This document shows, one piece after another, positions 18,988-61,830 of a DNA stretch of 64,000 bases. The first letter of the stretch is position 1; each line of letters opens with the position of its first letter. The notes below the pieces were generated by a model that did not search any database, had not been told where the DNA came from, and saw only the letters and a list, made by a program, of their open reading frames with translations. The DNA lies in IMG/VR virus record IMGVR_UViG_3300028829_003504, positions 62,001 to 126,000 of that record. One strand, written 5' to 3'. Made by a program: the position numbers and the translations under genes.

Positions 18988-21156
18988 ATGATTAATGAAA
19001 TTCGTTTAAGGACGTTTACTTCGCAGGTTGGAGAGGATAATGAAGTTCTCTCCAGAGACCCGAAGCAGAACGCTATAGAATACGAAGGAGATACAGGTCC
19101 CAATACTAGATTAGTTGAGGATGTCGCCTTCAATAAAAAACTAGGTGTACTAACATTCATTAGAAACAACGGTGAAGTCATTGAAGCAAGCGGGTTCTTA
19201 ACAGAGGATCAGATAGGGCACGGCCCTAAAGGTAAGGTAGGTAGAATAGGTAAAGCAGGTCGTGATGGTGAAGAAGGCCGACTAGGTAAAGAAGGACCTG
19301 CTGGATGTGAAGGTGCGCAAGGTAATGCGGGCGATAAAGGGATGTCAGGTAGAGATGGTGAGGATGGTCCTGTAGGTATAGCAGGTACTTCTGGATGTGA
19401 AGGAGATGTAGGCCCTGAGGGTGACGAAGGGGATAAAGGTCCTAAAGGATTCCAAGGATCGATGGGTAAAGACGGGTTAGACTGTATCATAGGCTGTCCT
19501 GGACCTAAAGGGGAACAAGGTTTAGGTACTTTTGTAGTACAAAAGGAAACACCTACTGAGGAGCACGTATACTTATGGGGCGTTCCTTTTGAGAGCGTTT
19601 TACCTGAGTTACCCAAAAAGCCTGATGATATGTCAGCTTCAATCAATTCTATAGTAGTTACTATGACTAAGGATAGAGGTACTACTTATACTGCTTCAGG
19701 CTCTTTAATAGTGAGCGACTTTAAAGGTGGTGTAGGACCTTTCTCTATCATTTGGACAGGTGACTATAAAGCTAAGTTAGGTATAACTAAGGATAGTATA
19801 AGTAACGACAGCCTAAGATTATCACTTGATGCCTCCGCTGAAATAGAACCAGGTGAGGTTGCTGAGATTGCTGGCGATGCCGTTGTTACCATAACGGATA
19901 CGTCAAATGGTAAACAGCTAGTTTTACCTACTACGTATGAATTTAAAGGGAGCAACAGTACGGTAGTTGCTCCTCCCATATACGGTAACGTACGTGATGC
20001 AGCCGTTGTTGAAGGTGATGACTTAAAGTTCTTAGTAACTACTACGAGTCCTTTACTCTCATCAGTACGAATCACATATACGCTAAAGTCAGGAACAGCA
20101 GGAACCTCCGACTACAAGGATTTGGGTCAAGGTTACATGGACTTAAGCATAGGCGTGGACCAGTTCTACGTTAATGTAGAAGCAATACGCGATTCTATAC
20201 CTAACGAAGATGTGGAAACAATGTCGGTTACTGTTAGTATTCCTGGCGTATCTGAATTAAATGCAGGTGATATGACAGCAATAGGTACTATTACTGAGGC
20301 TGATAGCCATATAGTACCTATTGTCCTAGGGCCTGCAGTGGTGACGGAGGGAAGTACTGCAAAAATAACCATCAGGCTAGGTGGTTCTTACATAGAAGGT
20401 GTCACCGGCGGCTACGCAGTTAAGTATAGAACATTATCGGATACAGCGGGTACGTCGGACTACGTAGCTCGGTCTGGGACTCTAACTTTCACCTATAGTT
20501 GGGAAGAGAAAGTCATTGAAATAGCAACAATAGATGATTCTATTGTTGAAGCCACTGAGCAGTTTTATTTTGAGTTGTACGATGCAGGTGCACATCTTGA
20601 CTTAGGTGGAGATACTAAAAAAGTTACGGTTACAGTTAATGACAATGACGAAACTTATAGGGGTTCTACCGGCGGTGGGTGTATAGGATGGGGTGCGAAA
20701 GTTGAAACGCCTGAAGGTACTACATCTATAGAGACTGTATTGATAGGTGATACTATCCTAGGATACGCTGAGCCTAGTATGTCAACAAGTGCTAATTCAA
20801 ACGATCCAGAAGTATTAAACTGGCACGCCCTTGAGTTAAGAGGCAAACGTGCTTGGGTTATGGTTACAAATGCTAGGCATGATACATACCCTCAATACAA
20901 AGTTATCAACGATCTTAACTTAACTTTCGATCATCCTGTCATGACTAAGCGTGATGGCGTATGGCAGTGGCTACCTGCCCTGCAAGTTATAGTTAGTGAT
21001 ATTGTCCTAGGCACTGATAGTCAAGAAGTCCCAGTTACAATAGCTACAGAAGTATACAAAGAACTTAAAGTAGTAGAGCTTGACGTTGAGCCTCACGATG
21101 TCTATTATGTTAACGACATACTAGTCCACAATGTGAATAAAATTGTACATAAGTAA
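18988..21156 (+). CDS. collagen-like fibre protein with two Calx-beta domains and a C-terminal Hint domain
   Basis: About 32 Gly-X-Y triplets; Calx-beta motifs (V.EG...Y.T.SGTAGTSDY; GTLTF...K.I.I.TIDD.IVE..E.F); GGG|C...TFDH...VHN. Confidence 0.85.
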   Translation: MINEIRLRTFTSQVGEDNEVLSRDPKQNAIEYEGDTGPNTRLVEDVAFNKKLGVLTFIRNNGEVIEASGFLTEDQIGHGPKGKVGRIGKAGRDGEEGRLGKEGPAGCEGAQGNAGDKGMSGRDGEDGPVGIAGTSGCEGDVGPEGDEGDKGPKGFQGSMGKDGLDCIIGCPGPKGEQGLGTFVVQKETPTEEHVYLWGVPFESVLPELPKKPDDMSASINSIVVTMTKDRGTTYTASGSLIVSDFKGGVGPFSIIWTGDYKAKLGITKDSISNDSLRLSLDASAEIEPGEVAEIAGDAVVTITDTSNGKQLVLPTTYEFKGSNSTVVAPPIYGNVRDAAVVEGDDLKFLVTTTSPLLSSVRITYTLKSGTAGTSDYKDLGQGYMDLSIGVDQFYVNVEAIRDSIPNEDVETMSVTVSIPGVSELNAGDMTAIGTITEADSHIVPIVLGPAVVTEGSTAKITIRLGGSYIEGVTGGYAVKYRTLSDTAGTSDYVARSGTLTFTYSWEEKVIEIATIDDSIVEATEQFYFELYDAGAHLDLGGDTKKVTVTVNDNDETYRGSTGGGCIGWGAKVETPEGTTSIETVLIGDTILGYAEPSMSTSANSNDPEVLNWHALELRGKRAWVMVTNARHDTYPQYKVINDLNLTFDHPVMTKRDGVWQWLPALQVIVSDIVLGTDSQEVPVTIATEVYKELKVVELDVEPHDVYYVNDILVHNVNKIVHK
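20680..21132 (+). other. Hint (intein-like / BIL-type) autoprocessing domain, about 151 aa
   Basis: Block A CIGWGAKVETPEG, block B LTFDHPV, blocks F/G VVELDVEPHDVYYVNDILVHN. The +1 residue is Val and there is no endonuclease insert. Confidence 0.85.
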
Positions 21157-21166
21157 GGAGAATTAA

Positions 21167-21799
21167 ATGTTAACTAGACCTCCTATGGAATCAGTTAATG
21201 CTAACGGTACTGCCAGTCAGACTGACGTTATAGTTAAAGACGGGAAGTTAGCTGCGGGTAACAAAGAAGATAGTCAAACCGCTGAGGTACAAGATATATT
21301 CTTCGATTCTACTGTCGGTATTCTCGTCATAGAGTTTACTAATGGTGAGACTAAGCGTGTATCTGGGTTCCCTACGTTCGGAACTATACCGGATGGTCCT
21401 GCAGGTCCTACAGGCGACCCTGGTGAAGACGGAAAAGAGGGACGTGACGGACGTGACGGTGAAACAGGAGCACCTGGATGCTTCGGGCCTATTGGACCTA
21501 AAGGAGTAGAGGGTGATCCCGGACGCAATGGCGAAGATGGAGCACCCGGAGCACCTGGACCTAAAGGCTGTCCTGGTCCAGCAGGTAATAAGGGACCTAA
21601 AGGGGAACCTGGAGATGTGGGGGAACCTGGAGTACAAGGACCTCCAGGTGATACAGGTCCTCAAGGCCCTGAGGGTGAGCGTGGTCCAGCAGGTAAAATC
21701 AACTATATCATAAGTACATCAGACCCAGGAACTAGCGCAGGTGCTGGCAGTATATGGATTAATCCTAACATTACAGAAACCAGCCCGGCTTGGCCGTAG
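21167..21799 (+). CDS. collagen-like fibre protein
   Basis: MLTRP N-terminus, about 33 uninterrupted Gly-X-Y triplets and a [13 protein letters not shown] cap. Confidence 0.85.
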
Positions 21800-21807
21800 G
21801 AGTTAGT

Positions 21808-22875
21808 ATGAGTGACGTTAAAACCAATATGCTAGATATCGGACATATTAGCGGTGACTTACGAGTCCAAGATGGAACGCTTAAAATTGTCCCTGATTCT
21901 ATGACGCCTAATGGCAATGTTACAGGATATATTGATAAAACAGGAGTCTTGACTATTGACATACCTGGCCACGGTACTATACAAGCAAACGGATTCCTAA
22001 CGCGTGCTGATATCGGTCAGGGGCATGAAGGCAATAGGGGAAATGAAGGCAGTAATGGAACTGACGGATCGATAGGATTAGATGGCTCCAAAGGTGTTAT
22101 AGGTGATAGGGGAGAAGTAGGTAGTAGAGGCGTACCTGGAGTAAGAGGACCCAGAGGCATGCAAGGCAGTTTTGGCCAAAATGGCAATAGTGGTGCGGAG
22201 GGAGTTAAAGGAGATGACGCCTTTGTTAATATGTTTATACAGGAGTCAGACCCAGGGGCTCCAGGCGCAGGCGCAGTATGGGTTAAACCTATATACACCC
22301 ACCTGCAAGAAGCCATTGCTGATATACAAGCCAATTGTAGTAGTGATGAAGATGAAGATACAGAGGAATTACCAGTCATTGAAGGTGATTCGGAATCACA
22401 TCCTTATACAAGTGATGGACATGCTACAGGTAGCTTAGTCGTTTACTTCGATACAAGTACGTACACCACTTTAGAAGACAGCGGTAAGGAATTCATACGT
22501 GTAGAAGAAGAAGAAAGATTCATACTAATACTTAGACTACTTTCGCCGTTACCTATTGATGCTGTATTCCAAGTGAAACTTAGAGAGGACCCTACTAATA
22601 TTGCATGGGCGGGATTCAAATGGGATTCAGATGACGCTAAGGGTACTGTAGAAAGAACACTTACAATACCAGCAGGTAAGTTAGTCTCTGATGAACTTAC
22701 CGCTTACGTTCCTGAGGATTGGGTAATCGCAAGCGATAGCGGTTATGGCGAACTTGCAATTTCGTCCGATTCAGGTAACAATCAAATAATGATTGACGAA
22801 AGTACGTACCAATTTGTCAGTGATTCCCCCAAATTGAACTATATTAAGATGCGAGTCTATCCTAAGATTTCGTAG
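21808..22875 (+). CDS. collagen-like fibre protein with C-terminal beta-rich domain
   Basis: GF.T...IG collagen lead-in, about 21 triplets and DPGAPGAGAVWVKP. Start placed at the ATG after a GGAG RBS (the track starts at 21790). Confidence 0.8.
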   Translation: MSDVKTNMLDIGHISGDLRVQDGTLKIVPDSMTPNGNVTGYIDKTGVLTIDIPGHGTIQANGFLTRADIGQGHEGNRGNEGSNGTDGSIGLDGSKGVIGDRGEVGSRGVPGVRGPRGMQGSFGQNGNSGAEGVKGDDAFVNMFIQESDPGAPGAGAVWVKPIYTHLQEAIADIQANCSSDEDEDTEELPVIEGDSESHPYTSDGHATGSLVVYFDTSTYTTLEDSGKEFIRVEEEERFILILRLLSPLPIDAVFQVKLREDPTNIAWAGFKWDSDDAKGTVERTLTIPAGKLVSDELTAYVPEDWVIASDSGYGELAISSDSGNNQIMIDESTYQFVSDSPKLNYIKMRVYPKIS

Positions 22876-22902
22876 TATTACATAATTTTCTAAACACGTG
22901 AG

Positions 22903-23400
22903 GTGCTTATGTTAACAAGACCACCACTAAATGCAATTGATGCTGGAGCCGAAAGCGGTGACGTAACTTCAAATGCACTTAATCTACAAGTAGAATCTAT
23001 TGACGATAGTATAGCGACTGAGCTTGGTGCTAAATACGATTCAGTCAATGGCTCTCTAGTTATATCATTCCCAGGATACCCACACCTTAGGATAAACGGC
23101 TTCATGACGCCTATTCATATTAAAGAAGGCAGACAAGGTAAACCTGGGTATGAAGGCAGAGAAGGAATCGAAGGCACTATAGGATCTGACGGAGAGCAAG
23201 GCCAGCAAGGATGTTTAGGCCCAGAGGGTCCTCAGGGACGTCCAGGTCAACGTGGACCTAGAGGTCAGATGGGTTCTCAAGGTGAGATTGGTCCTACGGG
23301 TCCTGATGGGGCTAAAGGAGAGCCTGGAGAATTTCTAGTCTATATACAGAACGACGAACCCGTAGGGGTGGAGCACGGTGCGCTGTGGGTGAAACAATAA
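22903..23400 (+). CDS. collagen-like fibre protein
   Basis: MLTRPP N-terminus, about 22 Gly-X-Y triplets and a GALWVK cap. Confidence 0.85.
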   Translation: MLMLTRPPLNAIDAGAESGDVTSNALNLQVESIDDSIATELGAKYDSVNGSLVISFPGYPHLRINGFMTPIHIKEGRQGKPGYEGREGIEGTIGSDGEQGQQGCLGPEGPQGRPGQRGPRGQMGSQGEIGPTGPDGAKGEPGEFLVYIQNDEPVGVEHGALWVKQ

Positions 23401-23412
23401 TTAGGAACTAAT

Positions 23413-26070
23413 ATGGCACTTAACTTAGAACTATCAAGTTCGAATGAAAAGTCAGTACTATACGATGGTGAGTACGGAGATTTAGACTACATAGAAAGCT
23501 CCTTAACTTTATATTTTAGTGTAGAAGGAACTAGCTCGTATTCTGTTACGATTATCGATGCGGATACAGGAAACGACCAGACGTCTATCGTACAAGTCGG
23601 TCAGGGAACACTAACCATAGACCTTCGTATTCTAAAAAGTTATTTCACAATAGGTACTACCGTATTCGGTGGTACTGTTGTGTTACAGATAGACGATAAT
23701 GATAGTACTGATACTGGTCAGTTTAACATCGACTTCCATTTCGCCGTTACAAATAACGCAGTATACGTGGCTCCAGTGACATTCGGCCTCAGTACAAACG
23801 GTATTGCCATTAGTACTGAGTTACAGCGCAGTAGTGGTATTGATTTCGTTGAGCGCGCCGCGTATCCTACGGTAGAAGTACTTGGAGGCTCAGGTCCTTT
23901 CGAGTACACTTGGGTTCCTGCAAACTTTGAACACTTCTTAATAGAATCAGTAGAAGGTCTTGATACAGACAAACCTACCGTAAACTATAAACTCGATGTT
24001 GCGTCGGACCTACCTGAAGAACTATTTAATTCCGATGGAGGCAAGTGGACTCAGACAGGTATATTTAACGTAAGCGTTCGAGATACCAGTAACGGTGATA
24101 TCTCGTTAGGAGAAGTATCCTGGAGCTTCACTGTTAGTGTACAGGAGGAGGAAAGAGGCGACTCGGTAGTTAAAGAAAGCAGAATCATACCAGGACGATT
24201 TAGAGTACGAAACCCTCTCAATAGCTTCTGGTATGACTTATGTTATTATGAAATGTACGTCTTTGATAAAGATTACCTACAGTGGATTAGACTATTCCCT
24301 AATAAGGTGTTTGTGCGCGATGGAGGCAGCAGTGATTGGATTGAAATAGGTTGCATTACTGATACTTCCTATGACGACCCTTGTGCAGGCTTCGGGTCAG
24401 GTACCGATTGTTCAGGTGAACCTCAAGATCCTCTTGCGGGATCTGGTGATGGATTTGGTTCTAATGGTCCTTCATACGATGTCGATACAGGATATCCTGC
24501 AGGCTTTGATATGCCTGACAGCTCACTCGGTGGCTACGGTATTAAGATTGCACCTAAAGCCACTGGTTACGATACTCCGGTAGGTTACATAATGCAGCGT
24601 CCCGGACTACAGTCGGAAGAATCTTATGATCCTACAGGTCTATCTGCCGATGAAGGCGCTCACGGTAAGTATAATAGTCCTAACTTAAATGGAGCCAGCA
24701 CTTGGGGTAGAGGTGCAGCGGTTACTGAGACTATATATGAATTACCTGCACAGAATGGTTATTACGAACTTCTCTATGCTGCTTACGATTCCGTTAGTAT
24801 CGATGTTTACTACGTAGGTCAGCGAGTAGCTACAACATGTGGACCTGTGCCTAAGTTGACGCGAGGTCTATTGACGTTTAATGTTAACATAGCGACAGGT
24901 CTAGGTGAAAGACGTATCATGATTAGGGTACGTGGTGCCGAGGATGTTAGATGGGCTTACCAAGTAGTAGGTCCTAAAGCTTCACCTGTGCTACAAGATT
25001 TCGATAACCAAGACGATGATGATTACGCAAATATCAATGAGTTTCTTTACGAAGAATCTGAAATGATGCAAACCCAGTACATAGGTACGCCTATGTTTCC
25101 TGCACCCTGTCACGGCACTGTAGGTAATGTAGATCAGACGTTTCCTTGGGCATTATCTGATAGAATTGAGACGCAAAACTGGTTTGAGTACTATCACTAT
25201 GTCGGCGAAAACGGGGGTCCAATGGTGCTCGATTTTAGCTCATGGGCAGCCGCTGACTACGTTGAAATCTGGCAAAATGGGGTTCGGATAGCTACATCTC
25301 AAGATTATAACCAAACTCCAGGCTATGTTGATTTTATATATGAAGCCCGTGAAGGCGTTCAAGATATAATGGTTAGAGTGCATACAGAATCAAAAGGTAT
25401 GGGTCAAGATTTAAGTACTTGGTACTATACACTATTCTGCCCTAACGCAATTGGCCACAGAAGACAACCATGGCCTTGTGGGCCTGACGTTATATACAGC
25501 ATGGGACATCCTGCCACAGAGGATAACTTTGATATAGATAACGGCGTCGAGCGTGGTGCCTTTAAAGTATACATGCGAGAGTGTACGGCTACTACATTAG
25601 TTAGAGTATTCAATAGAGACGGAGACTTGATAACGTCGATGACGGGCGAAGGTGACTTCGATGTAGAGGCTTTCAATTTCGATGTGGTTACAGGAGAAGT
25701 ACATAAGGATATATATGTACGTGTTGAGACTTCTATAGGGCATGGTTGGCAATACACCGTAAGTTGTCCAGTACCTTTACTTGATATAATACTAAAACCT
25801 GTAGACCCAAGTGTAGAGTGGTCTATAACCGATGAAATTATACAGGACGATTCTGAGTATGTCGAACTTATCGTAAGCATAAACAAAGCCCAATTGGTTG
25901 ATAGGTCTATTGATTGGGCTACTAGCAACGACACTGCGTATGACCTAACGGACTACTGTGCTGCTAACGGAACTGTGACAATACCTGCTGGACAGACTAG
26001 TATTAAGATTCAAATTAATTTAGCTCCTTGTGATGCTGAGGATGAGGATGAGGATGCACCTAGCACCTGA
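23413..26070 (+). CDS. acidic virion/fibre protein with repeated beta-sandwich domains and an incomplete C-terminal Calx-beta domain
   Basis: Three units ending W.Y.V/L.(C/G)P. The C-terminus IDWATSNDTA..LTDY....GTVTIPAGQTSIKIQI stops before the last Calx-beta strands. Confidence 0.75.
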   Translation: MALNLELSSSNEKSVLYDGEYGDLDYIESSLTLYFSVEGTSSYSVTIIDADTGNDQTSIVQVGQGTLTIDLRILKSYFTIGTTVFGGTVVLQIDDNDSTDTGQFNIDFHFAVTNNAVYVAPVTFGLSTNGIAISTELQRSSGIDFVERAAYPTVEVLGGSGPFEYTWVPANFEHFLIESVEGLDTDKPTVNYKLDVASDLPEELFNSDGGKWTQTGIFNVSVRDTSNGDISLGEVSWSFTVSVQEEERGDSVVKESRIIPGRFRVRNPLNSFWYDLCYYEMYVFDKDYLQWIRLFPNKVFVRDGGSSDWIEIGCITDTSYDDPCAGFGSGTDCSGEPQDPLAGSGDGFGSNGPSYDVDTGYPAGFDMPDSSLGGYGIKIAPKATGYDTPVGYIMQRPGLQSEESYDPTGLSADEGAHGKYNSPNLNGASTWGRGAAVTETIYELPAQNGYYELLYAAYDSVSIDVYYVGQRVATTCGPVPKLTRGLLTFNVNIATGLGERRIMIRVRGAEDVRWAYQVVGPKASPVLQDFDNQDDDDYANINEFLYEESEMMQTQYIGTPMFPAPCHGTVGNVDQTFPWALSDRIETQNWFEYYHYVGENGGPMVLDFSSWAAADYVEIWQNGVRIATSQDYNQTPGYVDFIYEAREGVQDIMVRVHTESKGMGQDLSTWYYTLFCPNAIGHRRQPWPCGPDVIYSMGHPATEDNFDIDNGVERGAFKVYMRECTATTLVRVFNRDGDLITSMTGEGDFDVEAFNFDVVTGEVHKDIYVRVETSIGHGWQYTVSCPVPLLDIILKPVDPSVEWSITDEIIQDDSEYVELIVSINKAQLVDRSIDWATSNDTAYDLTDYCAANGTVTIPAGQTSIKIQINLAPCDAEDEDEDAPST

Positions 26071-26226
26071 TACTTTCCTAGCTACTATACGTAAAGCTTT
26101 TGAATCTGTAATACCATTTATGTGATTTGATAACCATACAGTCATAAAGTATTAGGGAGTAAGGAGTTAGTAGACCTTGCAGGTAAGTCAGGTAAATGGT
26201 GGCAAGTACTTAATTAAGGAATTATA

Positions 26227-28020
26227 ATGGCAAAACGATTTCATGTTGACTTAGCGAATCCTAGTTTCGGAGTCATAGAAAAAGGTAAAGGAATTGTAAC
26301 GATTCTGGAGGTAGCTGAACCTTTACCTCCAGAGCGGCCTGAACCCGAACTAGTAAATGAATACATCTGGGAATGTATATTTGAAAACTTAGATGGTGAT
26401 GAGGTGAAGTCTGTACCTCATAATAGCGAAGAAGGCTACGAGTATATGATAGCCCATATAGATCTAGAAGGTGATAACGAGATTACTTGGAGCCACGTAG
26501 CTAGATTTATAGGGGACAATCCCACAGGTACACCTATGGCGCAGAATATAGATAGTGGTGTAGGCGTGAGTGACAATTTTGGTATATTTATAGATACGTC
26601 CAACGGTAGTTCTATAATAATTAAAATTATGCGTAGACCTCTACCTGTAGCTGCCGACGAAGACAGCAGAGTAACAGGAAATGAGTTCGTCCGTGTTAGC
26701 GGAAATGACTTAAGCTACCAGTGGGATTTAAACTACGAATACTACATAACCTGTACTTATGGCACACTATCTAACTATACAGGAACTATAATTACCGATG
26801 AAGTATCCTACGGCTATTCGAGCATAGATAAATCAACTGCTTGGATAGCAAACATCGATCAGGATAGGAAGAAGTGGGTAGGGTTTGGACATAAATCATC
26901 AGAGCCTGGTAATAAATCTTATCGTACAGTAGTTACAAAGAGATGTGACTTACACAGCGTATGGCGCAGGCCTTGGTCGGCATCTAGCCTTCCAGCTAGT
27001 GAGTTTGCCAATGAGCATAAACGTGTTAAGAATAACATGGATAGTCCTTCTACTACTTTAACGTTCGACTGGAAAGATAACAAAGAATACCTCGTCATGA
27101 TGGCGGATACTTCTTCTGACAACGAGGTAGCTTGCGCTAAAGTGTATACTACTCCTGGTCTGTTAGAAGTACCAGGCGTAACTAGACATAAATCAGGTAT
27201 TGCTGCACCTGGTGGTAACCCATCATGGATAGAATTCCTACAGACCAGCGTAGGCGGTAGTAAAAAGATAGAGGCGCACCACGGATATATATTAAATATA
27301 CTCGAAAGAGATATGTTCTATGACCCTGGGACGTGCGGCGCTGAAGGTTTCGTAGGTCCTGTTAGCTCTATTTCATCTTTAGCTAGTATTAACACAATAG
27401 GTAAAATCGCGTTTATGTCTGACACCCCAGGTATTACAAAATACGGGGCTTCGGCTACAGACGGTTCAGCTTTGGAAGTTGAGGCTTATATAGGGGACTG
27501 GACAGGCAATGTACCCGATGTATACAATGATAAGTATACTAGCGATATTCAAGGTATAGCGATACCTTATAGTTACGGTGGGGGTATCGCTAGTAACATG
27601 ACGCCTTCCGATCCGTATCTAGCCGAGTCAAAATCTACGGCTTGGAGAGGCTGGTACCTATCCGTCATAGACGAAACTGAACACACTTCTGGTATTAAGT
27701 ACAGTAAGATAACGAGTATCGATATTAACAAGTACGTAGATGGCCACACTTTAGTAATAAGGTGTGAGGACTCTGCTGATGGTGATTATACGCTTGAGAG
27801 TAATTCCTCGATAGTGGACAACAACACAGGACGCTCCGTTAGCCTTAGTGATATCTACGGAATCAGAACTAAAGCATTACACATAGGATTTCAAGATACC
27901 TTAGCAAGAAATCAGTCAGGAATGGATGCTGAGGTTACTATTGCTATTGAATTTGAATTTCATGATGGTACGATGTTTTCACATACATTGACTCTTGCCG
28001 CTAATAGTGAAATATATTAA
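26227..28020 (+). CDS. virion/fibre protein whose N-terminus matches the terminal strands of a Calx-beta domain
   Basis: AAGGA RBS; starts MAKRFHVDLANPSFGVIEKGKGIVTILE, followed by a Pro-rich linker. Confidence 0.75.
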   Translation: MAKRFHVDLANPSFGVIEKGKGIVTILEVAEPLPPERPEPELVNEYIWECIFENLDGDEVKSVPHNSEEGYEYMIAHIDLEGDNEITWSHVARFIGDNPTGTPMAQNIDSGVGVSDNFGIFIDTSNGSSIIIKIMRRPLPVAADEDSRVTGNEFVRVSGNDLSYQWDLNYEYYITCTYGTLSNYTGTIITDEVSYGYSSIDKSTAWIANIDQDRKKWVGFGHKSSEPGNKSYRTVVTKRCDLHSVWRRPWSASSLPASEFANEHKRVKNNMDSPSTTLTFDWKDNKEYLVMMADTSSDNEVACAKVYTTPGLLEVPGVTRHKSGIAAPGGNPSWIEFLQTSVGGSKKIEAHHGYILNILERDMFYDPGTCGAEGFVGPVSSISSLASINTIGKIAFMSDTPGITKYGASATDGSALEVEAYIGDWTGNVPDVYNDKYTSDIQGIAIPYSYGGGIASNMTPSDPYLAESKSTAWRGWYLSVIDETEHTSGIKYSKITSIDINKYVDGHTLVIRCEDSADGDYTLESNSSIVDNNTGRSVSLSDIYGIRTKALHIGFQDTLARNQSGMDAEVTIAIEFEFHDGTMFSHTLTLAANSEIY

Positions 28021-28030
28021 GGAGATTACT

Positions 28031-28585
28031 TTGCCTACTGTTCAAAAACATTGGCTAGTTAACGAATTGGACATTAATACTTATGACGGAAGTTATCAAG
28101 TAGAAGGTGTCCCTTACGTTAAGAACCAAAGCTGTGGCTTTATCATTAAACCTAATTGGGGACTTAGTGTTGACGTAGTTAGCGGTAAGACTATCTTGGG
28201 TCCTAAAAAAGGTAACTTAATGTTAGCTATAATACCGGATAGTACATTACATAAGTCCGAGTGGCTAGAAGGCCAGACGTCAGGTGTTATCGACATAGGG
28301 CGTTTTCATTACGAAGATAGCCAAAGCTACGACTTCACTATTGTATCCAAAAGGGAATCAGGTAAAGGAATAGTCGTACCTCCAGTAGGGACGCATAGCT
28401 TTAAGCAAGATGTATATTCATGGCTTAAATCCCCAGATGCTGCGGTATTTTCTTTCGAAATACATTTGGTAATTGATGACACAACGGATTATATACAAGA
28501 GTTCACTCCGTTATTAGTTAATTTAATAAAAACTCAGAAGTCCAGCAATATAGGCTTCCACGCCGAAGACAAAATAGAGGTATAG
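28031..28585 (+). CDS. hypothetical virion-associated protein
   Basis: TTG start after an AAGGAG RBS (the track begins at 27995, same frame). Confidence 0.65.
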   Translation: MPTVQKHWLVNELDINTYDGSYQVEGVPYVKNQSCGFIIKPNWGLSVDVVSGKTILGPKKGNLMLAIIPDSTLHKSEWLEGQTSGVIDIGRFHYEDSQSYDFTIVSKRESGKGIVVPPVGTHSFKQDVYSWLKSPDAAVFSFEIHLVIDDTTDYIQEFTPLLVNLIKTQKSSNIGFHAEDKIEV

Positions 28586-28587
28586 TA

Positions 28588-30975
28588 ATGGCTACTACCA
28601 ACTTTGCACCTCTGCTTACAGTGGGTGATGAATACGACTTGTCACCTTTTAGTGGCAGAAACATGGTAATACATGCCCAACGCAATAACACAGGATATAC
28701 GTATACATTCAGCATTGACATACTGACTGGTTTTGATCAAGATCGTTACTACGGTCTTATTGTACCTTCGGGACATGGAGAGATACCTCAATCCAATCCT
28801 AATCAGTTGTTTAAAATCACAGCCGATGCTAAGCTTGTACCTCTTAACTATAGTGATGGTCTTGCAGCACAGATTAGCTACCTTACAGGTGATGATGCAG
28901 GAACTCCAGATATCAATGTACATTGGGGATCAGTAGCCCAGCTTACGGTTATCTCAAGTACTGCAAATGAGGGAACTGAGGCGCTACTTAGAATATACAG
29001 GGATGGTGATACTTCGGGTGCGGTTGATATTAATATTGGTTTTATTCCGGGGACCGCGGACTTAGATGATGTACAGTCTATACCTCCATCTGTTACTATG
29101 CAGTCGGGCTTCTCGTTTGTGGATGTACCTATTACTATTAAGACTGACCTTGATTACGAAGGGGACCAGTCATTTTTATTAAGTGCCCAAATAGCAAATG
29201 CGCCTAATGGGGAGGAATGGACAGGTAGTAACTACAGGCAGTTGGTTATTGTAGATACAACTCCTGAATTTCCTGTAGATGTACCCGGTTGTATGGACGT
29301 TACCGCTAACAACTATAACGATGAGGCTACGATCGACAATGGCAGTTGTACCTATGACCCTGTAGTTGTACCAGGCTGTACTGACCCTCTAGCCAACAAC
29401 TATGATCCACTGGCTACTTCGAACAACGGCAGCTGTACATACGACCCAGTGGTGGTATACGGATGTACTGACCCTTCGGCAAGCAACTATAACCCACTAG
29501 CTACAGATAATGACAATTCCTGTGTCTATCCGCCTCCTGTAGTGGACTGTCTAGTCGTAGGAGACTTACTGGAAGTAGAACATTGGTTTAAAGTTTGGTT
29601 TATAGAGCCTGTTGACGGAGAACAGCTACACGACCAAGATTTAATTCAGTATAAGTGGAGCGGTGACTGGGTAACTGACCCTCGTATAGACCTATTCGAT
29701 TACTCGGAGAAAAATCGTGTAGCGATGTTCAAATTCACCAACACTATGTCTTCATCTGATAGTGACGTAGATGTAGACTACGAGGTAACAGCTTGGGCTA
29801 AAGATTTAAGGTTCATTACGTTAGATGTTACTGACGAAGATAGTGCCAATGTAAGCTTCTCTATGCCTTGTGTTATTGCAGGTAATACCCCAAGCTTTAG
29901 CGTAGGCGACATTACAGTTACGGAACCTAGTAGCGGTACCCTAAAAGCATCTGTTTATATAACGGCAAGCGAAGCCGTAACGGGTGGATCTATTACAATC
30001 GATTACTGTTCGAGTGATATAACCGCTACGTCATCTAGTGCCTCTGTAGATGGAGACAGAGATTACGAGCCTGCCTGCGGTACGGTTACTTTTGAAGTAG
30101 GTGAAAGCTCTAAACAAATAGATGTAACTATAAATACTGATAATCTGTACGAACCTTCCGAGACATTAAAGATGACCATATCTAATGTCAGTCGGGGCAG
30201 TATATCAGACTCGGTAGGTACTATAGAGATACAAGAATGGATTGTTCCTACAGTATCAGTTACTCTGGCGTCACAGGGAGCTACGAAAGAATTGTTTGTG
30301 GGTCGCGATACTTCCGGATCGACGGATGCGGTTGAGGTGACAGTAAACGGAAATGTCGAATCAAGACGTTTCTTGATGGAACAGGTCCTCAAGGACTATG
30401 ACATAGCTATATGTGATGAACCCGTTGAGACTGGTCACGGTAATGACGGATGTTCAGACAATTCTAATCCCCTGTCCCACTATAAAGGTGTTGCGGGTGC
30501 TACTAGTAATTTGACTGTCAACTATATAAATAGCATACAACCTCTTCTTGATTCAGGTACTCAGGAGATTAGTATCCTAGTAATGAATGATAGCTCCGAT
30601 GCAATATCCCATGATAACTCTGTATGGGATAACGAGTGGGCTTGGCTAGGAGCTTTAGGTATCCCTGTTACTCTGACCTTCATACGCGTAATAGGGCAGA
30701 CTCATATAGATAACGGTACAGGTAACTATGAATTGGCTCGCATCTGGTTTGAAGAAATCGTTGCTGCTGCACCAGGTAATGTAACGGCTTACTTTAAATC
30801 CTATAGCTCCTACACAACAGGCGCAGCCAGTGACCTAAATGATATACTAAGCAGTACAGTCAATAATGACTATGCGGCAACATGTAACGCCCGACCCGAT
30901 GACGTTATAATAGTAACAGCACCGGACGAAGACTCAGCCTTATCCTTAGCACAGGGAGCCATAACATGTCCTTAG
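28588..30975 (+). CDS. adhesin-like fibre protein: Calx-beta, 3x Cys repeat, Calx-beta, vWA-like domain
   Basis: Two Calx-beta motifs, GC(T/M)D..A.NY...AT..N.SC.Y repeats and the MIDAS-like DTSGS at 30307. Confidence 0.75.
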   Translation: MATTNFAPLLTVGDEYDLSPFSGRNMVIHAQRNNTGYTYTFSIDILTGFDQDRYYGLIVPSGHGEIPQSNPNQLFKITADAKLVPLNYSDGLAAQISYLTGDDAGTPDINVHWGSVAQLTVISSTANEGTEALLRIYRDGDTSGAVDINIGFIPGTADLDDVQSIPPSVTMQSGFSFVDVPITIKTDLDYEGDQSFLLSAQIANAPNGEEWTGSNYRQLVIVDTTPEFPVDVPGCMDVTANNYNDEATIDNGSCTYDPVVVPGCTDPLANNYDPLATSNNGSCTYDPVVVYGCTDPSASNYNPLATDNDNSCVYPPPVVDCLVVGDLLEVEHWFKVWFIEPVDGEQLHDQDLIQYKWSGDWVTDPRIDLFDYSEKNRVAMFKFTNTMSSSDSDVDVDYEVTAWAKDLRFITLDVTDEDSANVSFSMPCVIAGNTPSFSVGDITVTEPSSGTLKASVYITASEAVTGGSITIDYCSSDITATSSSASVDGDRDYEPACGTVTFEVGESSKQIDVTINTDNLYEPSETLKMTISNVSRGSISDSVGTIEIQEWIVPTVSVTLASQGATKELFVGRDTSGSTDAVEVTVNGNVESRRFLMEQVLKDYDIAICDEPVETGHGNDGCSDNSNPLSHYKGVAGATSNLTVNYINSIQPLLDSGTQEISILVMNDSSDAISHDNSVWDNEWAWLGALGIPVTLTFIRVIGQTHIDNGTGNYELARIWFEEIVAAAPGNVTAYFKSYSSYTTGAASDLNDILSSTVNNDYAATCNARPDDVIIVTAPDEDSALSLAQGAITCP
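29287..29529 (+). repeat. three tandem 29-aa (87-nt period) GCTD..A.NY...AT..N.SC.Y repeats
   Basis: Units start at 29287, 29374 and 29461, each with two Cys. Confidence 0.9.
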
Positions 30976-31637
30976 AAGTTCCTGTATTTGTACAGAACGT
31001 ACCCATTAGGCCTTTGCAGCGTAAAGTACAGTGGTACGAGTTTACGCCGTCAAAAGTAAATGGTTTCTTCGACTTCGTACTATCACAAGGGCGTAAGCCT
31101 ATAGGCCGTATCGATATATTCCTAGGAACTAAGTTAATTCAATCGACCAGTCCTACAGATGCACCTGAATTTGATATACAGACCTGGAAGAACTTTAATG
31201 CCAGTAAGTTTGCGATGGAGCCTAGAGGCGCTATTGAGTTTAGTAATATAGATAAATTCTTTATAAATAAAGATGATGTTATTTACGTCAGGATAGAGGC
31301 AGAATTACCGGCAGCCTTTAGATTTTCACTTAATAGATGCCATATCCTGGATTTAAGTGAGTCTATCGGCCTCGTTGTAGATGTATGTAATAGTACTAGA
31401 TTAATTGTCGATCAAGGCCGCCAACCTTGTAATTTCAGAATAGACTTTGGTAAGATACTTAGTACGGATTTTACTCTATCGGAGCATACCAGTAAGATAC
31501 TGTCGGTGCCTATTAGCGCAGACGCTTCGGTTGAGTGGTCTTATGTACCAGGCCGCGATATTAGAATTCGAAGTATAGAACTTTCTACCATAGTACCCTA
31601 TAAAACTAATATTCGAATAGTGAGGAGTAATGGCTAA
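30966..31637 (+). CDS. hypothetical virion-associated protein
   Basis: 223-aa beta-rich ORF with GGAG RBS. Confidence 0.7.
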   Translation: MSLEVPVFVQNVPIRPLQRKVQWYEFTPSKVNGFFDFVLSQGRKPIGRIDIFLGTKLIQSTSPTDAPEFDIQTWKNFNASKFAMEPRGAIEFSNIDKFFINKDDVIYVRIEAELPAAFRFSLNRCHILDLSESIGLVVDVCNSTRLIVDQGRQPCNFRIDFGKILSTDFTLSEHTSKILSVPISADASVEWSYVPGRDIRIRSIELSTIVPYKTNIRIVRSNG

Positions 31638-31845
31638 CTCAATCTTATTAAGAGCTAGGGATTCAGATGGGAGTTGGATTGAAAACTTCCATCTAGGTGC
31701 TTGGTTGATGCGCAATGAAGATAATACCGCTTGGGTACCAATGACAACTGCAAATACTAGAATCGCTAATCCTGATTATGATCCAAATGATTTAGATTCA
31801 ATTATGTGGTTGGTTCCCGGCGACCCAAGACAAACTGGAGATTAG
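31630..31845 (+). CDS. small Trp-repeat virion protein
   Basis: GAGGAG RBS; R.RD...W / MRN..N..W units resemble a segment of 23413..26070. Confidence 0.7.
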   Translation: MANSILLRARDSDGSWIENFHLGAWLMRNEDNTAWVPMTTANTRIANPDYDPNDLDSIMWLVPGDPRQTGD

Positions 31846-31846
31846 T

Positions 31847-32608
31847 ATGTTAACTAAACCGAAGATTAGTATGATAGCTCCAAGTCAGAACTCTGCTGAT
31901 AATGATGTAGTGAAGACGGCTGGAGGTAAGTTAAAGTCGGAGCAGAATGTAGTACCTATAGGGGACGCCGCAGTTAAGAGTGGCCGATATGATACTACGA
32001 CAGGCACTTTGATGATAACGTTAGGTGATGACAGTACTTTAGTCGTGGAGGGTTTTCCTACTGACCAGAGTATAGGAACTGGCCCTAAAGGTGATAGAGG
32101 TGCTGTAGGAAAAGGAGGCCGTCCTGGCAAGAACGGCAAAGATGGATTAGATGGCCCTCAAGGATGTCCAGGGTCTAAAGGAGATAAAGGTGAAATCGGT
32201 CCTACAGGGCCAGAAGGCCCTATGGGTATAACGGGTGAGCAAGGTATTCAAGGTATTCAGGGCCAGCAAGGTGACAGGGGACCTAAAGGAGAACCTGGGC
32301 AAGAACCTATTTACGTATACAGTGAAGCAGGTAGTGAAGAACGAACAGTACAATATGGCCGTGTCATGCTGTGGGGTCACTATCAGTCGGACGGTAGCGT
32401 TAACACTGCTGATGTTAGGTATCCTCAGGCTACAACTAGACTTACACAAACTGTAGTAGCCTTCTTCGCTAATCCTCAATCCGTTCAAGCTCAAAACTAT
32501 GAGATTGAAGCGCAGACGAAAGAAGGGTTTGCTCTACGCGTACCATCATCATTTGCCTTACCCCTTGATGACGATTGGGACTTCCAATGGATAGCACTAG
32601 GAGATTAA
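31847..32608 (+). CDS. collagen-like tail fibre with C-terminal lectin-like tip domain
   Basis: MLTKP N-terminus, about 24 triplets, and GRVMLWGH...V.YP.A...GF.....F.WIALG typical of fibre tips. Confidence 0.8.
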   Translation: MLTKPKISMIAPSQNSADNDVVKTAGGKLKSEQNVVPIGDAAVKSGRYDTTTGTLMITLGDDSTLVVEGFPTDQSIGTGPKGDRGAVGKGGRPGKNGKDGLDGPQGCPGSKGDKGEIGPTGPEGPMGITGEQGIQGIQGQQGDRGPKGEPGQEPIYVYSEAGSEERTVQYGRVMLWGHYQSDGSVNTADVRYPQATTRLTQTVVAFFANPQSVQAQNYEIEAQTKEGFALRVPSSFALPLDDDWDFQWIALGD

Positions 32609-36538: not shown

Positions 36539-36574
36539 ATATTTAAAACTAAACCTTAATTGGAGAATTCTTTT

Positions 36575-61200: not shown

Positions 61201-61830
61201 TATACGGTGGGTAAGATAAGTACTTAACATTGCGACGAGGGCGGACTTACCAGAACGCTGTCCTGCGTTAACTGCGAGTTCATTGTAGAAGTTTAGTTCT
61301 TCGTCACGCATCATGTGAGAACGTCTAGCCTGGCACTTAGGACAAACACCATACTCTAACAGTACTACTCTGCGTTCGAATTCTACTAATCCGTCTTGAG
61401 GGTCGTGACCCCCATCATCCATCCACTCAAGGTCAGAACATCGGGCGCAATACTCTGAGAAAAGCTTAACGCCAATGAGTGCTTGCTCTAGGTACGGAGG
61501 CATATCTGAACCGAGGAATTCCTCGTTCGTGCACCAATCGTAATAGTTCTTTGCTTGGGACATGGAGCTATCGTCGATTTTTAAATCTCTAGGAACTATG
61601 TCCTTAGAATCGACTACTTCTGATATAACAGCGAAGAGGTCTCTCTCCTCGTTTGCATATTGCTTAGCAAGATCACTAGGTTCCCCTATCATAGCCATGT
61701 CTGTATTATTCGCTGAGACCTCTAAATCAGTCTCCTCGTCAGTCAGGCCTATAAGATCAGAAATCCCTGAAACTAGTCCAGGGTTTTTGTTTCTGACTGC
61801 AACAGGGGATGATCTCTTCTTACGAGCCAT
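58270..61830 (-). CDS. terL: terminase large subunit containing an intein
   Basis: Walker A AGQRSGKS, ALTYAQA, spliced Walker B RTRIFG|SVDEIGW, coupling ISSP and RNase H-like AVDAG...DDI nuclease motifs; N-terminal CxxC pairs. Confidence 0.9.
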   Translation of the reverse strand: MARKKRSSPVAVRNKNPGLVSGISDLIGLTDEETDLEVSANNTDMAMIGEPSDLAKQYANEERDLFAVISEVVDSKDIVPRDLKIDDSSMSQAKNYYDWCTNEEFLGSDMPPYLEQALIGVKLFSEYCARCSDLEWMDDGGHDPQDGLVEFERRVVLLEYGVCPKCQARRSHMMRDEELNFYNELAVNAGQRSGKSALVAMLSTYLTHRILKAQKPTQLFRVKSNTVFHGTFVALTYAQAKDTLWEPYYQYLCESPWFQKYHALLRRYEQKYGHEIFKLKDTFVLYRHRSLMVYPAGPDKRTLRGRTRIFGCIPGDQLISTSEGLIRMDKIKEGWCWTNVGASYGEITKHVCTGTKEIWGLKLKSGQELKATPEHKICVYRNNKFKKVKLKNLLETDRVVISTGAEFSRELKFTVVQPTQSSSKQIVYAAMAKLVNFTRKEIKEASNGSKALTKVMTQLRRSGMIERHYRKGVMYTGMERCYYNITDKFNLSDLILDSSHDGLNVVLPECMTDDLASILGYLTADGNVQDKGQRGYRFDTTNLDKYNDYCDKVVRTFGIAPRHLQTKRLGKKVYRASISHRPIIEFLQKIGCTSDYSAYKQVPWSILQAPESCAMSYIRSAFDCDGGFLSRKTVYYRSTSKELIKQIQQLLLRLRIASSFKKTKYGSKGDWHKVDYKYGDRKVFLYRLDMSREFSRIFVSHIGFDFRRNSTAYDTDGQSMYEDYYEPTKEFDLFTSEIEYVKPSKIKVKTYDMTVNIPEHAYQASGMLVSNSVDEIGWFDNDKNSSKVKINGSEVYIALERSLRTVRNSERRQLASEYDEALTGYFMNISSPSSQRDKICELIRQSHGSKKLLGLHKPTWEMNPDVTRADLDDEFRKDHGTAMRDYGAQPPLSSNPFITSEELVKGIIKKTGRNFANVTYKIYKAKDGAKYRWGYVDKVKSCEGKSVMAVDAGYSNNCFALSIGSLQKVEVNGEEVVIPVLDIVVEINPLPSIPLHYPKIYENIMIPLIEARNVKILLADRWNSIKLLQDAEISTDIDLWKQYSLKYSDFVDFKTRMQQQQILIPRPHVKQEFDDILALSTHDEYPMCFERMPVEHFILQMLTVQDAGKTVIKGDDLTDDIWRASVLCMWGLTNPDFIDILKGSVVSSKSKAALGVASYGSKGSTGKMNNTRSLIGTSKSLGNKQR
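59518..60897 (-). mobile_element. intein (460 aa) with LAGLIDADG homing endonuclease
   Basis: Starts CIPGDQLISTSEG; block B ATPEHK; LAGLIDADG-like LGYLTADG and SAFDCDG; ends TYDMTV...HAYQASGMLVSN, with +1 Ser. Confidence 0.92.

What the first reader, a model, noticed from the sequence alone, without database searches (positions are those of the whole stretch)
18988..32608. Candidate covalently assembled collagen/Calx-beta fibre system on the virion
Seen: five collagen-like paralogues (18988, 21167, 21808, 22903, 31847) share a lead-in domain (G.L.I......GF.T...I..G), and four share a cap ending in a W(V/I/G) motif. They are interleaved with Calx-beta, Cys-repeat and vWA-like proteins. One chain ends in a Hint domain and one Calx-beta domain is split over two genes. 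Inference: these parts build long whisker-like, possibly heterotrimeric fibres, joined by Cys cross-links, Hint-driven processing/ligation and strand complementation. That would be an extracellular-matrix-like adhesive coat resembling the 'hairs' of hairy jumbo myoviruses. I know of no described assembly mechanism of this kind, but could not search for one.
Basis: partly seen in the sequence, partly recalled or inferred. Interest (0 to 1): 0.75.

Follow-up and report, generated by a model that had tools for sequence, protein, structure and literature searches.

The report
Collagen-stalk tail fibre module with self-cutting Hint
This is the tail-fibre/whisker gene block of a marine jumbo phage: five short collagen-like stalk proteins, one made with a self-cutting intein-like end domain, plus adhesin proteins, one of which was split in two through the middle of a folded domain. 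The parts are real and partly undescribed, but covalent fibre assembly is not shown.

Summary
Five paralogues carry a shared ~75-aa lead-in, 22-34 Gly-X-Y triplets and a Trp cap. Calx-beta domains, a 3x 29-aa two-Cys repeat and a C-terminal vWA domain (p795) lie between them. p722 ends in a Hint domain. One Calx-beta sandwich is split between p885 and p597.

The block is the conserved tail-fibre module next to the baseplate genes of the PaBG/Y3/JA/NCTB "hairy" jumbo myophages. About 30 relatives have the same gene order and fixed triplet numbers per paralogue.

The Hint is an A-type bacterial-intein-like (BIL) domain with all catalytic residues. It belongs to a large family that sits at the extreme C-terminus of fibre-like proteins, after a poly-Gly linker and before a short Lys-containing tail. 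It is missing from orthologues that end exactly at the junction, so self-removal is the most likely role. Ligation is untested.

The Calx-beta split is conserved in at least four lineages and is intact in NCTB. Donor-strand-like complementation is plausible; the complex prediction gave only weak support.

Unequal but conserved helix lengths argue for homotrimers, not heterotrimers. An almost invariant Cys at triplet 10 is unexplained.

Verdict: a new variant of a known kind, of moderate interest.

The parts
18988..21156 (+). p722, collagen paralogue type A. Lead-in aa 1-78; collagen aa 79-180 (29 triplets, Cys-containing break, 4 more); Trp cap to about aa 205; Ig-like region with a GGxGPFxxxW motif to about aa 334; Calx-beta-like repeat about aa 335-445; Calx-beta aa 472-554; Gly linker; Hint; 7-aa tail.
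   Evidence: Pfam Collagen and Calx-beta. phrog_38766 match at aa 40-340. Orthologues in about 30 relatives. Coordinates.
20680..21132 (+). A-type BIL (Hint) autoprocessing domain of p722: Cys565 (after GGG), Thr646-x-x-His649, His714-Asn715.
   Evidence: phmmer finds 517 relatives. Alignment A2 has these residues invariant or nearly so. The profile hits BIL domain 2lwy at E 6e-14. AF2 pLDDT is 91.6. Best Foldseek matches are the BIL domains 2lwy and 6y75, then mini-inteins and Hedgehog.
21133..21153 (+). C-terminal tail after His-Asn (VNKIVHK). The +1 residue is Val, not a nucleophile.
   Evidence: Across the family, tails have a median length of 7 aa and 128 of 132 contain Lys.
21167..21799 (+). 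p210, type B: lead-in, 34 triplets, Trp cap, nothing else.
21808..22875 (+). p355 (361 aa from TTG 21790), an extra type C' paralogue: lead-in, 22 triplets, Trp cap and a 190-aa C-terminal domain of unknown fold. It lacks the triplet-10 Cys.
   Evidence: Its best hits are the 164-aa type C proteins of relatives. It is present only in the window's sub-lineage: 405 aa in L005, 186 aa in L033. RBS shown.
22903..23400 (+). p165, type C: lead-in, 23 triplets, Trp cap. The likely true start is ATG 22909.
23413..26070 (+). p885: lineage-specific N-terminal part; conserved Cys/Trp-rich core (aa 262-788, phrog_26008); truncated Calx-beta (about aa 800-873) that ends at ..LAPC870 plus an acidic tail.
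   Evidence: phrog_26008 E 4e-106. Core alignment A4. Calx-beta profile positions 24-87 only, E 0.0033. Mapped onto the intact NCTB domain.
26071..26226 (.). 157-nt spacer at the fission point, the only long gap in the block.
   Evidence: Stops in all frames. No similarity to L005. No terminator, no stable fold (z 0.6), no Rfam match. The same spacer is in the identical complete genome L008.
26227..28020 (+). p597. Residues 2-30 are the last two strands of the split Calx-beta, followed by a Pro-rich linker, a conserved WEC motif (Cys50) and domains of unknown fold.
   Evidence: Residues 4-28 align to the intact NCTB Calx-beta; 0 of 2000 shuffles score as high. The hairpin is conserved in four lineages. 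In the predicted complex, residues 2-30 form the interface. The Atlas search gave nothing usable.
27995..28585 (+). p196, unknown function. The start is uncertain: the L005 homologue aligns from aa 36. The gene is absent in L033.
28588..30975 (+). p795, adhesin-like: weak Calx-beta-like repeat (aa 129-202); three 29-aa two-Cys repeats (aa 232-317); Calx-beta (aa 437-537); C-terminal vWA domain (about aa 560-795) with D-T-S-G-S-T at aa 574-579.
30966..31845 (+). p223 and the conserved small p71. p71 precedes the type D paralogue in all lineages. Functions unknown.
   Evidence: Synteny.
31847..32608 (+). p253, type D: lead-in, 25 triplets, divergent cap, 100-aa C-terminal domain.

Best explanation
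This is the tail-fibre/whisker module of a marine jumbo myophage of the PaBG-Y3-JA-NCTB lineage.

(1) Stalks. Each collagen paralogue most likely forms its own homotrimer. The shared ~75-aa lead-in docks it to the tail or baseplate, or nucleates the helix. The triple helix is a spacer of fixed length, about 19-29 nm. The Trp cap closes the helix.

(2) Type A (p722). It carries Ig-like and Calx-beta domains at its distal end. It is made as a precursor with a C-terminal A-type BIL (Hint) domain. That domain cuts itself off at Gly564|Cys565 by an N-to-S acyl shift and resolution of the thioester. Asn715 cyclisation releases the 7-aa tail. The mature fibre therefore ends where Hint-less orthologues end.

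(3) p885 and p597. They are the two halves of a formerly single protein, cut inside a Calx-beta sandwich. The first ~30 residues of p597 supply the two missing strands. This resembles donor-strand complementation in pili and joins the conserved core to a variable distal part.

(4) p795. With Calx-beta, Cys repeats and a terminal vWA domain, it is the likely adhesin.

Shown: domain identities, catalytic residues, synteny, and the location and conservation of the split.
Inferred: homotrimers, the attachment site, actual cleavage, complementation, and the adhesin role.
For: Lineage and context:
- Relatives and synteny place the block after the PAAR spike, gp25-like and wedge genes.
- The homologue of window 36560-38257 (PaBG gp257) was found in PaBG virions by mass spectrometry.

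Stalks:
- About 30 relatives keep four paralogue types with 29, 34, 23 and 24-25 triplets.

Hint:
- Cys1, TxxH and HN are invariant or nearly so.
- Sequence and fold are BIL-like.
- In 135 of the 150 best family members the domain ends within 25 aa of the C-terminus.
- The -1 residue is Gly in 81 of 112, and a +1 nucleophile is rare.
- JA29_099 ends exactly at Y3_110's Hint junction.

Split Calx-beta:
- The two pieces map contiguously onto NCTB's intact domain.
- The split point is the same in L005 and L033 and the hairpin-first N-terminus also occurs in P0240.
- The hairpin is 27/32 identical between window and L005, against 55% for the whole protein.
- Complex prediction: weak support, score 0.55 against a best control of 0.01. 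That mark was reached by 51 of 78 solved complexes and 2 of 108 mismatched pairs.

Adhesin:
- The top vWA fold matches (Z 11.4-11.7) include the pilus-tip adhesin PitA; the LapA adhesin vWFA domain scores Z 9.8. The D-x-S-G-S-T motif is conserved.
Against: - No virion proteomics or imaging exists for this phage, and none was available to me for the collagen proteins of relatives. The 14-band PaBG gel did not list them.
- Cleavage by the Hint is inferred from residues only.
- The complex score of 0.55 lies in the band the tool calls more often wrong than right unless the guess was likely beforehand.
- The vWA domain has no Pfam hit, and Foldseek TM-scores are below 0.5.
- A Cys at the same helix position in nearly all paralogues could mean contacts between paralogues that the homotrimer model does not explain.
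- The near-universal Lys in the Hint tails hints at chemistry beyond simple hydrolysis.
Confidence: 0.55

Rival explanations
1. The paralogues co-assemble, partly as heterotrimers, into long fibres. The fibres are joined covalently by disulfides and by Hint-generated thioesters captured by amines of partner proteins, and they form the hair coat of the virion.
For: - A Cys sits at the X position of triplet 10 in nearly all paralogue types and lineages.
- Cys870 at the split point of p885 is conserved in window, L005 and L033 but absent from NCTB's intact domain. Cys50 of p597 is conserved in four lineages.
- 128 of 132 Hint tails contain Lys, a possible acceptor.
- One of the closest structural matches is the Tetrahymena BUBL BIL2 domain, which I recall, from memory and not checked here, as conjugating a ubiquitin-like domain to lysines.
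- The hair proteins of this phage group are still unknown.
Against: - Helix lengths differ between paralogues and are conserved, which does not fit registered heterotrimers.
- The Hint is missing in JA-type phages, which are hairy, and in PaBG.
- The tail is too short to recruit a nucleophile, unlike Hedgehog's sterol-recognition region.
- No acceptor has been identified.
- Virions assemble in a reducing cytoplasm.
Confidence: 0.12
2. The Hint is a selfish or neutral BIL cassette that hops between hypervariable fibre genes, and the Calx-beta split is a neutral gene fission. Neither has an assembly role. The fibres are ordinary independent homotrimers.
For: - The Hint is present or absent sporadically among orthologues. 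There are extra copies on the large protein in NCTB, L023, L026 and L005, and solo 153-aa Hint ORFs.
- Hint copies group partly by genome rather than by host gene.
- BIL domains are described as residents of hypervariable regions.
- The window lacks the Hint that L005 has on the p885 homologue.
Against: - Catalytic residues are strictly kept.
- The poly-Gly linker and the Lys tail are conserved family features.
- The split is kept at the same residue in at least three sequenced junctions, and the donor hairpin is more conserved than the rest of p597.
Confidence: 0.2
3. Location alternative. The short cap-only stalks (types B, C, D) are the 'hairs' on the sheath or head of hairy myophages, not baseplate fibres.
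For: - Types B and C are only lead-in, helix and cap, with no receptor-binding domain.
- The clade is described as hairy, and its tail fibre proteins are named as candidates.
- In an unrelated hairy phage the hairs are thin, flexible and attached in rings on the sheath and on the capsid.
Against: - The genes lie inside the baseplate/tail-fibre block.
- There are only five copies per genome.
- No localisation data exist.
Confidence: 0.3

Closest known systems
Tail-fibre module of Erwinia phage vB_EamM_Y3, Dickeya phages JA/AD1, Pseudomonas phage PaBG and phage NCTB
   Same: Gene order is the same: PAAR, gp25-like, wedge, ~1500-aa protein, ~780-aa protein, then the collagen paralogues. There are four orthologous collagen types with the same triplet numbers. 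Y3 and NCTB also have a Hint on type A.
   Different: The window's sub-lineage adds two Calx-beta domains to type A and a fifth paralogue (C'). It splits the large protein through a Calx-beta domain. It replaces the ILEI-domain protein of Y3/JA with Calx-beta/vWA proteins.
A-type bacterial intein-like (BIL) domains (PDB 2lwy; Amitai 2003 and Dassa 2004, as summarised in PMC7765530)
   Same: Hint fold, Cys1, block B TxxH, terminal His-Asn, no +1 nucleophile, no endonuclease, and residence in variable surface-type proteins.
   Different: Here the domain is at the extreme C-terminus, after a poly-Gly linker and before a 1-15-aa Lys-containing tail. It sits on phage fibre-like proteins. Activity is untested.
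Self-cleaving C-terminal intramolecular chaperone domains of phage tailspikes and fibres (Peptidase S74; from my own knowledge)
   Same: A C-terminal domain of a trimeric fibre that is absent from the mature protein.
   Different: The fold and chemistry are unrelated, and there is no Pfam S74 match. A chaperone role for the Hint is only an analogy.
Hedgehog Hog domain
   Same: A C-terminal Hint that cleaves at a Gly-Cys junction through a thioester. The fold matches 1at0 and 6tyy.
   Different: There is no sterol-recognition region, only a 7-aa tail. His-Asn is present at the end.
Donor-strand complementation in chaperone-usher pili (from my own knowledge)
   Same: An Ig-like sandwich that lacks its terminal strands is completed by the N-terminal extension of the next subunit, which is encoded by a separate gene.
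   Different: Here two strands of a Calx-beta domain are donated. The arrangement arose by gene fission, since the domain is intact in NCTB. No chaperone is known, and complementation is only predicted.
vWA tip adhesins of Gram-positive and type V pili (PitA, RrgA, GBS104, Mfa5) and the LapA vWFA domain
   Same: A terminal vWA fold with a MIDAS-like D-x-S-x-S motif on a fibre-borne protein.
   Different: No sequence-level match to Pfam VWA. Metal and ligand binding are untested.

Membership tests
Collagen triple-helix repeat proteins (PF01391) | Long uninterrupted Gly-X-Y repeats that score above the Pfam threshold | tested here: met
   All five ORFs score 33-64 bits against a cut-off of 27.2. 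Runs are 22-34 triplets long.
Collagen triple-helix repeat proteins (PF01391) | Formation of a trimeric triple helix | not testable with these tools
   Needs CD spectroscopy or a structure of the expressed protein.
A-type BIL (Hint superfamily) | Hint fold | tested here: met
   AF2 pLDDT is 91.6. The best Foldseek hit is BIL domain 2lwy, E 3.7e-8, TM by target 0.81.
A-type BIL (Hint superfamily) | N-terminal Cys nucleophile, block B Thr-x-x-His, C-terminal His-Asn | tested here: met
   Cys565, Thr646/His649 and His714-Asn715 are present. They are invariant or at least 90% conserved in 52 relatives.
A-type BIL (Hint superfamily) | No nucleophile at +1 and no homing endonuclease | tested here: met
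   +1 is Val716. Across the family, +1 is Ser 9, Thr 5 and Cys 0 of 145. The domain is about 150 aa.
A-type BIL (Hint superfamily) | Auto-cleavage at its N- and/or C-terminal junction | not testable with these tools
   Needs expression of wild type against C565A and N715A.
Canonical intein | Inserted within a conserved host protein, with a C-extein starting with Cys/Ser/Thr so that the exteins are spliced | tested here: not met
   The domain is terminal. Only 7 residues follow it, and +1 is Val. A true intein with a LAGLIDADG domain lies elsewhere in the window.
Pretoxin HINT (PF07591) of polymorphic toxins | The Hint is followed by a C-terminal toxin domain | tested here: not met
   40 of 84 family members match the PT-HINT model, but the tail after His-Asn has a median of 7 aa.
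Hedgehog Hog domain | The Hint is followed by a sterol-recognition region and lacks a terminal His-Asn | tested here: not met
   The tail is 7 aa and His-Asn is present.
Calx-beta (PF03160) | Pfam match above the gathering score | tested here: met
   p722 scores 51.1 bits and p795 scores 51.2 bits against a cut-off of 27. The p885 C-end matches only profile positions 24-87 at 17.9 bits, as expected for a truncated copy.
von Willebrand factor A domain | Rossmann-like vWA fold | tested here: met
   The top 50 VIA-align matches are nearly all vWA domains, Z up to 11.7 with 150-170 residues aligned. Foldseek support is weaker: E 2e-4 to 4e-3, TM below 0.5.
von Willebrand factor A domain | MIDAS motif D-x-S-x-S plus downstream Thr and Asp | tested here: inconclusive
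   S-G-S-T is invariant, and Asp precedes it wherever the column is present. The downstream Thr and Asp were not assigned. There is no Pfam VWA hit.
PaBG/Y3/JA 'hairy Myoviridae' lineage | Shared core proteins and synteny | tested here: met
   The 784-aa protein is 35-41% identical over 99% of its length to 67 records of this group only. Module synteny holds.
PaBG/Y3/JA 'hairy Myoviridae' lineage | Hair-like appendages on the virion | not testable with these tools
   This is an uncultured marine metagenomic phage.

The most novel reading that the evidence does not exclude
The C-terminal Hint is a built-in ligation device rather than a disposable domain. The Gly564 thioester would be resolved by an amine: either the almost universal Lys of the Hint's own short tail or a Lys/N-terminus of a partner virion protein. 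That would give an isopeptide-capped or cross-linked fibre tip. In the same apparatus, a genetically split Calx-beta domain would be re-formed by donor-strand complementation and locked by a Cys870-Cys50 disulfide. Together this would be a phage appendage assembled with extracellular-matrix-like covalent chemistry.
Probability: 0.12. Interest if true: 0.85.

Novelty: new variant of a known kind. Interest (0 to 1): 0.55.

Why it matters
**Candidates for the hairs.** The proteins that make the hairs of hairy jumbo myophages are still unknown. This analysis defines a compact, conserved candidate set. It also gives testable features: fixed helix lengths, an invariant Cys, and a shared docking domain.

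**A large family of terminal Hint domains.** There are 517 cluster representatives of self-processing Hint domains on fibre-like proteins. As far as the paper library shows, the family has not been analysed. It may be a second, chemically different answer to the problem that the self-cleaving chaperone domains of tailspikes solve. It could also be a source of compact C-terminal cleavage or ligation tags.

**A naturally split Ig-like domain.** A split kept in several lineages is a clean natural case of protein joining by strand complementation. That is of interest for fibre modularity and host-range engineering.

Tried and rejected
- **Megablast** of the block against GenBank phages found nothing. 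Relatives were reached only at the protein level.
- **Pfam alone** barely sees the Hint (Hint_2, E 0.069). It gave nothing for p885, p597, p196, p223, the lead-in, the Cys repeat or the vWA domain.
- **Lead-in domain:** a profile search against PDB found nothing.
- **vWA domain:** a profile search against PDB by sequence found nothing.
- **p597:** the Atlas search gave no usable hit.
- **157-nt spacer:** I considered an intron, translational bypass or an assembly error. I rejected these because there are stops in all frames, no stable fold (z 0.6), no Rfam family and no terminator. The sequence is identical in a complete 262-kb genome. L033 has the same split with only an 11-nt gap.
- **Remnant of L005's Hint cassette in the spacer:** no similarity. 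The 177-aa domain inserted in L005 has only a marginal 27-aa resemblance to the p597 C-end, E 0.007.
- **Complex prediction** for the split domain returned 'weak support': 0.55 against a best control of 0.01. The mark was reached by 51 of 78 solved complexes and 2 of 108 mismatched pairs. I cite it as weak only.
I rebuilt the alignment without that row.
- **The Y3 paper** (Res Microbiol 2018), which should hold virion proteomics, is not in the library.
- **One literature search was wasted** on over-general terms.

Full report
**What the window is**

The block lies on the + strand in a run of tightly packed genes. The conserved 784-aa protein just upstream matches 67 phage records, all from one group: Erwinia Y3-like, Dickeya JA/AD1, Pseudomonas PaBG/Lu11-like and phage NCTB. 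Identity is 35-41% over 99% of its length. No nucleotide-level match exists in GenBank phages.

The window is part of an 82,973-nt IMG/VR record. An identical 21.6-kb stretch lies in a complete 261,788-bp genome with direct terminal repeats. The source is a marine metagenome.

In NCTB, PaBG, Y3 and JA29 the same gene order holds: PAAR spike, gp25-like protein, baseplate wedge, a ~1500-aa tail protein and a ~780-aa protein, then the collagen-like 'tail fibre' genes. The downstream homologue of window 36560-38257 is PaBG gp257, which mass spectrometry found in PaBG virions. So the block is a tail/baseplate appendage module.

**The collagen paralogues**

Pfam Collagen is significant in all five ORFs. 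They share a ~75-aa lead-in with an invariant G..L..GF.T...I..G pattern. A profile of 26 lead-ins finds exactly five copies in the complete genome, all in this block. The lead-in has no Pfam or PDB relative.

I compared about 30 relatives: 25 IMG/VR loci, four GenBank phages and two metagenome contigs. There are four orthologous types with fixed helix lengths:
- Type A has 29 triplets, then a Cys-containing break.
- Type B has 34 triplets.
- Type C has 23 triplets.
- Type D has 24-25 triplets.

The window's sub-lineage has a fifth paralogue, C', with 22 triplets. It is a duplicate of type C with a variable C-terminal domain.

Types B and C are nothing but lead-in, helix and a ~25-aa Trp cap. 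At 0.286 nm per residue (textbook value) the helices would be about 19-29 nm long. Lengths that differ between paralogues yet stay constant across genera argue for separate homotrimers that act as spacers of defined length. They argue against registered heterotrimers.

One feature is unexpected. A Cys occupies the X position of the 10th triplet, 28 residues after the first Gly, in nearly every paralogue of every lineage. The exceptions are JA-type A and C'. I cannot explain it.

**The Hint domain**

Pfam alone gives only E 0.069. A full phmmer scan of 1.84 billion representatives gave 517 relatives. Among the best of them:
- In 135 of the best 150 the domain ends within 25 residues of the protein's C-terminus.
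- The residue before the first Cys is Gly in 81 of 112, usually within a poly-Gly run.
- The +1 residue after His-Asn is almost never a nucleophile.
- Cys1, Glu, Asp and the terminal His-Asn are invariant, and Thr-x-x-His is at least 90% conserved.

The family profile hits the Clostridium thermocellum BIL domain (2lwy, E 6e-14) and then inteins. A confident model (pLDDT 91.6) is closest to BIL domains, then to mini-inteins and Hedgehog. These are the features of A-type BIL domains as summarised in PMC7765530.

Of 84 full-length members, 15 carry collagen repeats. Others carry Calx-beta, fn3, PKD, Big_2 or phage fibre tip domains. 58 match the Y3_110 PHROG.

Within the phage group the Hint is sporadic:
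- Type A carries it in Y3-like, NCTB-like, L026-like and window-like phages.
- It is absent in JA-type phages and in PaBG.
- The large downstream protein carries a second copy in NCTB, L023, L026 and L005.
- NCTB and L023 also have a solo 153-aa Hint ORF.

JA29_099 ends exactly where Y3_110's Hint begins. Hint copies group partly by genome rather than by host gene (with long-branch caveats).

The simplest reading is a self-removing C-terminal cassette. Cleavage would occur at Gly564|Cys565 through a thioester, and Asn715 cyclisation would free the tail VNKIVHK.

What happens to the thioester is unknown. One observation keeps a ligation-type outcome open: 128 of 132 short tails contain Lys, 3.7-fold over background, and seven of the eight one-residue tails are Lys. 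I found no paper that links intein-like domains with tail fibres. Deposited annotations of NCTB and Y3 already note an 'intein domain'.

**The split Calx-beta**

p885 ends in a Calx-beta that matches only profile positions 24-87. p597 begins with a sequence that looks like the last two strands.

NCTB's 1304-aa protein holds an intact copy. Its columns 37-81 align to the p885 C-end and columns 82-106 to p597 residues 4-28. The two pieces are contiguous, and 0 of 2000 shuffles reach either score.

The same cut is seen at the p885|p597 junction in L005 and L033, and P0240 begins with the same hairpin. In L033 the upstream protein ends at ..LAPC, and the next gene starts 11 nt later.

The donor hairpin is 27/32 identical between window and L005, while the whole protein is 55% identical. 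In L005 a 177-aa domain plus a Hint is inserted at the cut. The window instead has a 157-nt spacer without structure, terminator or RNA family.

A complex prediction of p885 aa 780-885 with p597 aa 1-45 gave weak support. The score was 0.55 against a best control of 0.01. That mark was reached by 51 of 78 solved complexes and 2 of 108 mismatched pairs. The interface used p597 residues 2-30.

Cys870 at the cut is present in window, L005 and L033, the split forms whose junction I could read, but not in NCTB's intact domain. Cys50 of p597 is conserved in all four lineages. A locking disulfide is possible but untested.

The arrangement works like donor-strand complementation in pili, but it arose by gene fission. 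I found no paper that describes this for phage fibres.

**The adhesin-like proteins**

p795 has the following parts:
- a weak Calx-beta-like repeat;
- three 29-aa two-Cys repeats (87-nt period);
- a significant Calx-beta domain;
- a C-terminal domain whose seven homologues keep a D-x-S-G-S-T motif.

The model of that C-terminal domain (pLDDT 81) matches vWA domains almost exclusively in an exhaustive structural search. Z reaches 11.7, and the matches include pilus-tip adhesins and LapA. Foldseek agrees only weakly.

p885's conserved core (phrog_26008) is shared by the whole group. p597, p196, p223 and p71 remain without assignment.

**Verdict**

- This is a fibre apparatus of a 'hairy' jumbo phage lineage, built from extracellular-matrix-type domains.
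- It very probably includes Hint autoprocessing and plausibly strand complementation.
- Heterotrimers are disfavoured.
- Covalent ligation and a coat-like matrix are not supported by any test I could run.

Compared with what is known, the module is a new variant of a known kind. Three sub-findings appear unanalysed in the papers I could search:
- the terminal BIL family with its Lys tail;
- the conserved split Calx-beta;
- the invariant triplet-10 Cys.

Noticed in passing
window 58270-61830 (-): A 1186-aa ORF holds a canonical intein with a LAGLIDADG endonuclease (Pfam LAGLIDADG_3 E 1.6e-16; Intein_splicing E 1.1e-8, 35.5 bits against a curated cut-off of 35.8). The Hint profile also picked it up weakly. 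I did not identify the host protein.
   Followed up: partly
window 21133-21153, and the Hint family (P0081-P0229): Short tails after the terminal His-Asn almost always contain Lys: 128 of 132, 3.7x background, and seven of the eight one-residue tails are 'K'. This could be an acceptor, a catalytic helper or codon bias. It is unresolved.
   Followed up: partly
window 19306-19308, 21479-21481, 23212-23214, 32165-32167 (Cys107/105/104/107 of p722, p210, p165, p253): A Cys sits at the X position of the 10th Gly-X-Y triplet in nearly all paralogue types across about 30 phages. It is absent only in JA-type A and in the extra C' paralogue. Some lineages have a second Cys at triplet 20.
   Followed up: partly
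window 26020-26022 (Cys870 of p885) and 26374-26376 (Cys50 of p597): A Cys lies right at the fission point in the split forms (window, L005, L033) but not in NCTB's intact Calx-beta. A conserved WEC motif lies 20 residues after the donor hairpin. A locking disulfide is conceivable.
   Followed up: no
L001 21948-22409; L023 8373-8834: NCTB-type phages have a free-standing 153-aa Hint ORF directly after the type A fibre gene. It is very divergent, with a long branch in the tree.
   Followed up: no
L005 14606-18232: In the closest relative, the p885 homologue is 1208 aa. It carries an extra 177-aa domain and a Hint inserted exactly at the Calx-beta cut. That Hint groups with NCTB-type Hints, not with the Hint on L005's own type A protein.
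   Followed up: partly
window 26199-26228: The 157-nt spacer holds a sigma-70-like match (10 of 12) just upstream of p597. It is the only long intergenic gap in the block. The match is a consensus hit only.
   Followed up: no
window 22903-22911 and 27995-28100: Start codons are uncertain. p165 probably begins at ATG 22909 (MLTRPP, as in its paralogues and in L005). The p196 homologue in L005 aligns only from residue 36.
   Followed up: partly
window 19600-19990 and 23800-24200: p722 and the N-terminal part of p885 share a GGxGPFxYxW motif reminiscent of SprB-type Ig-like repeats (Pfam SprB, E 0.12 only).
   Followed up: no
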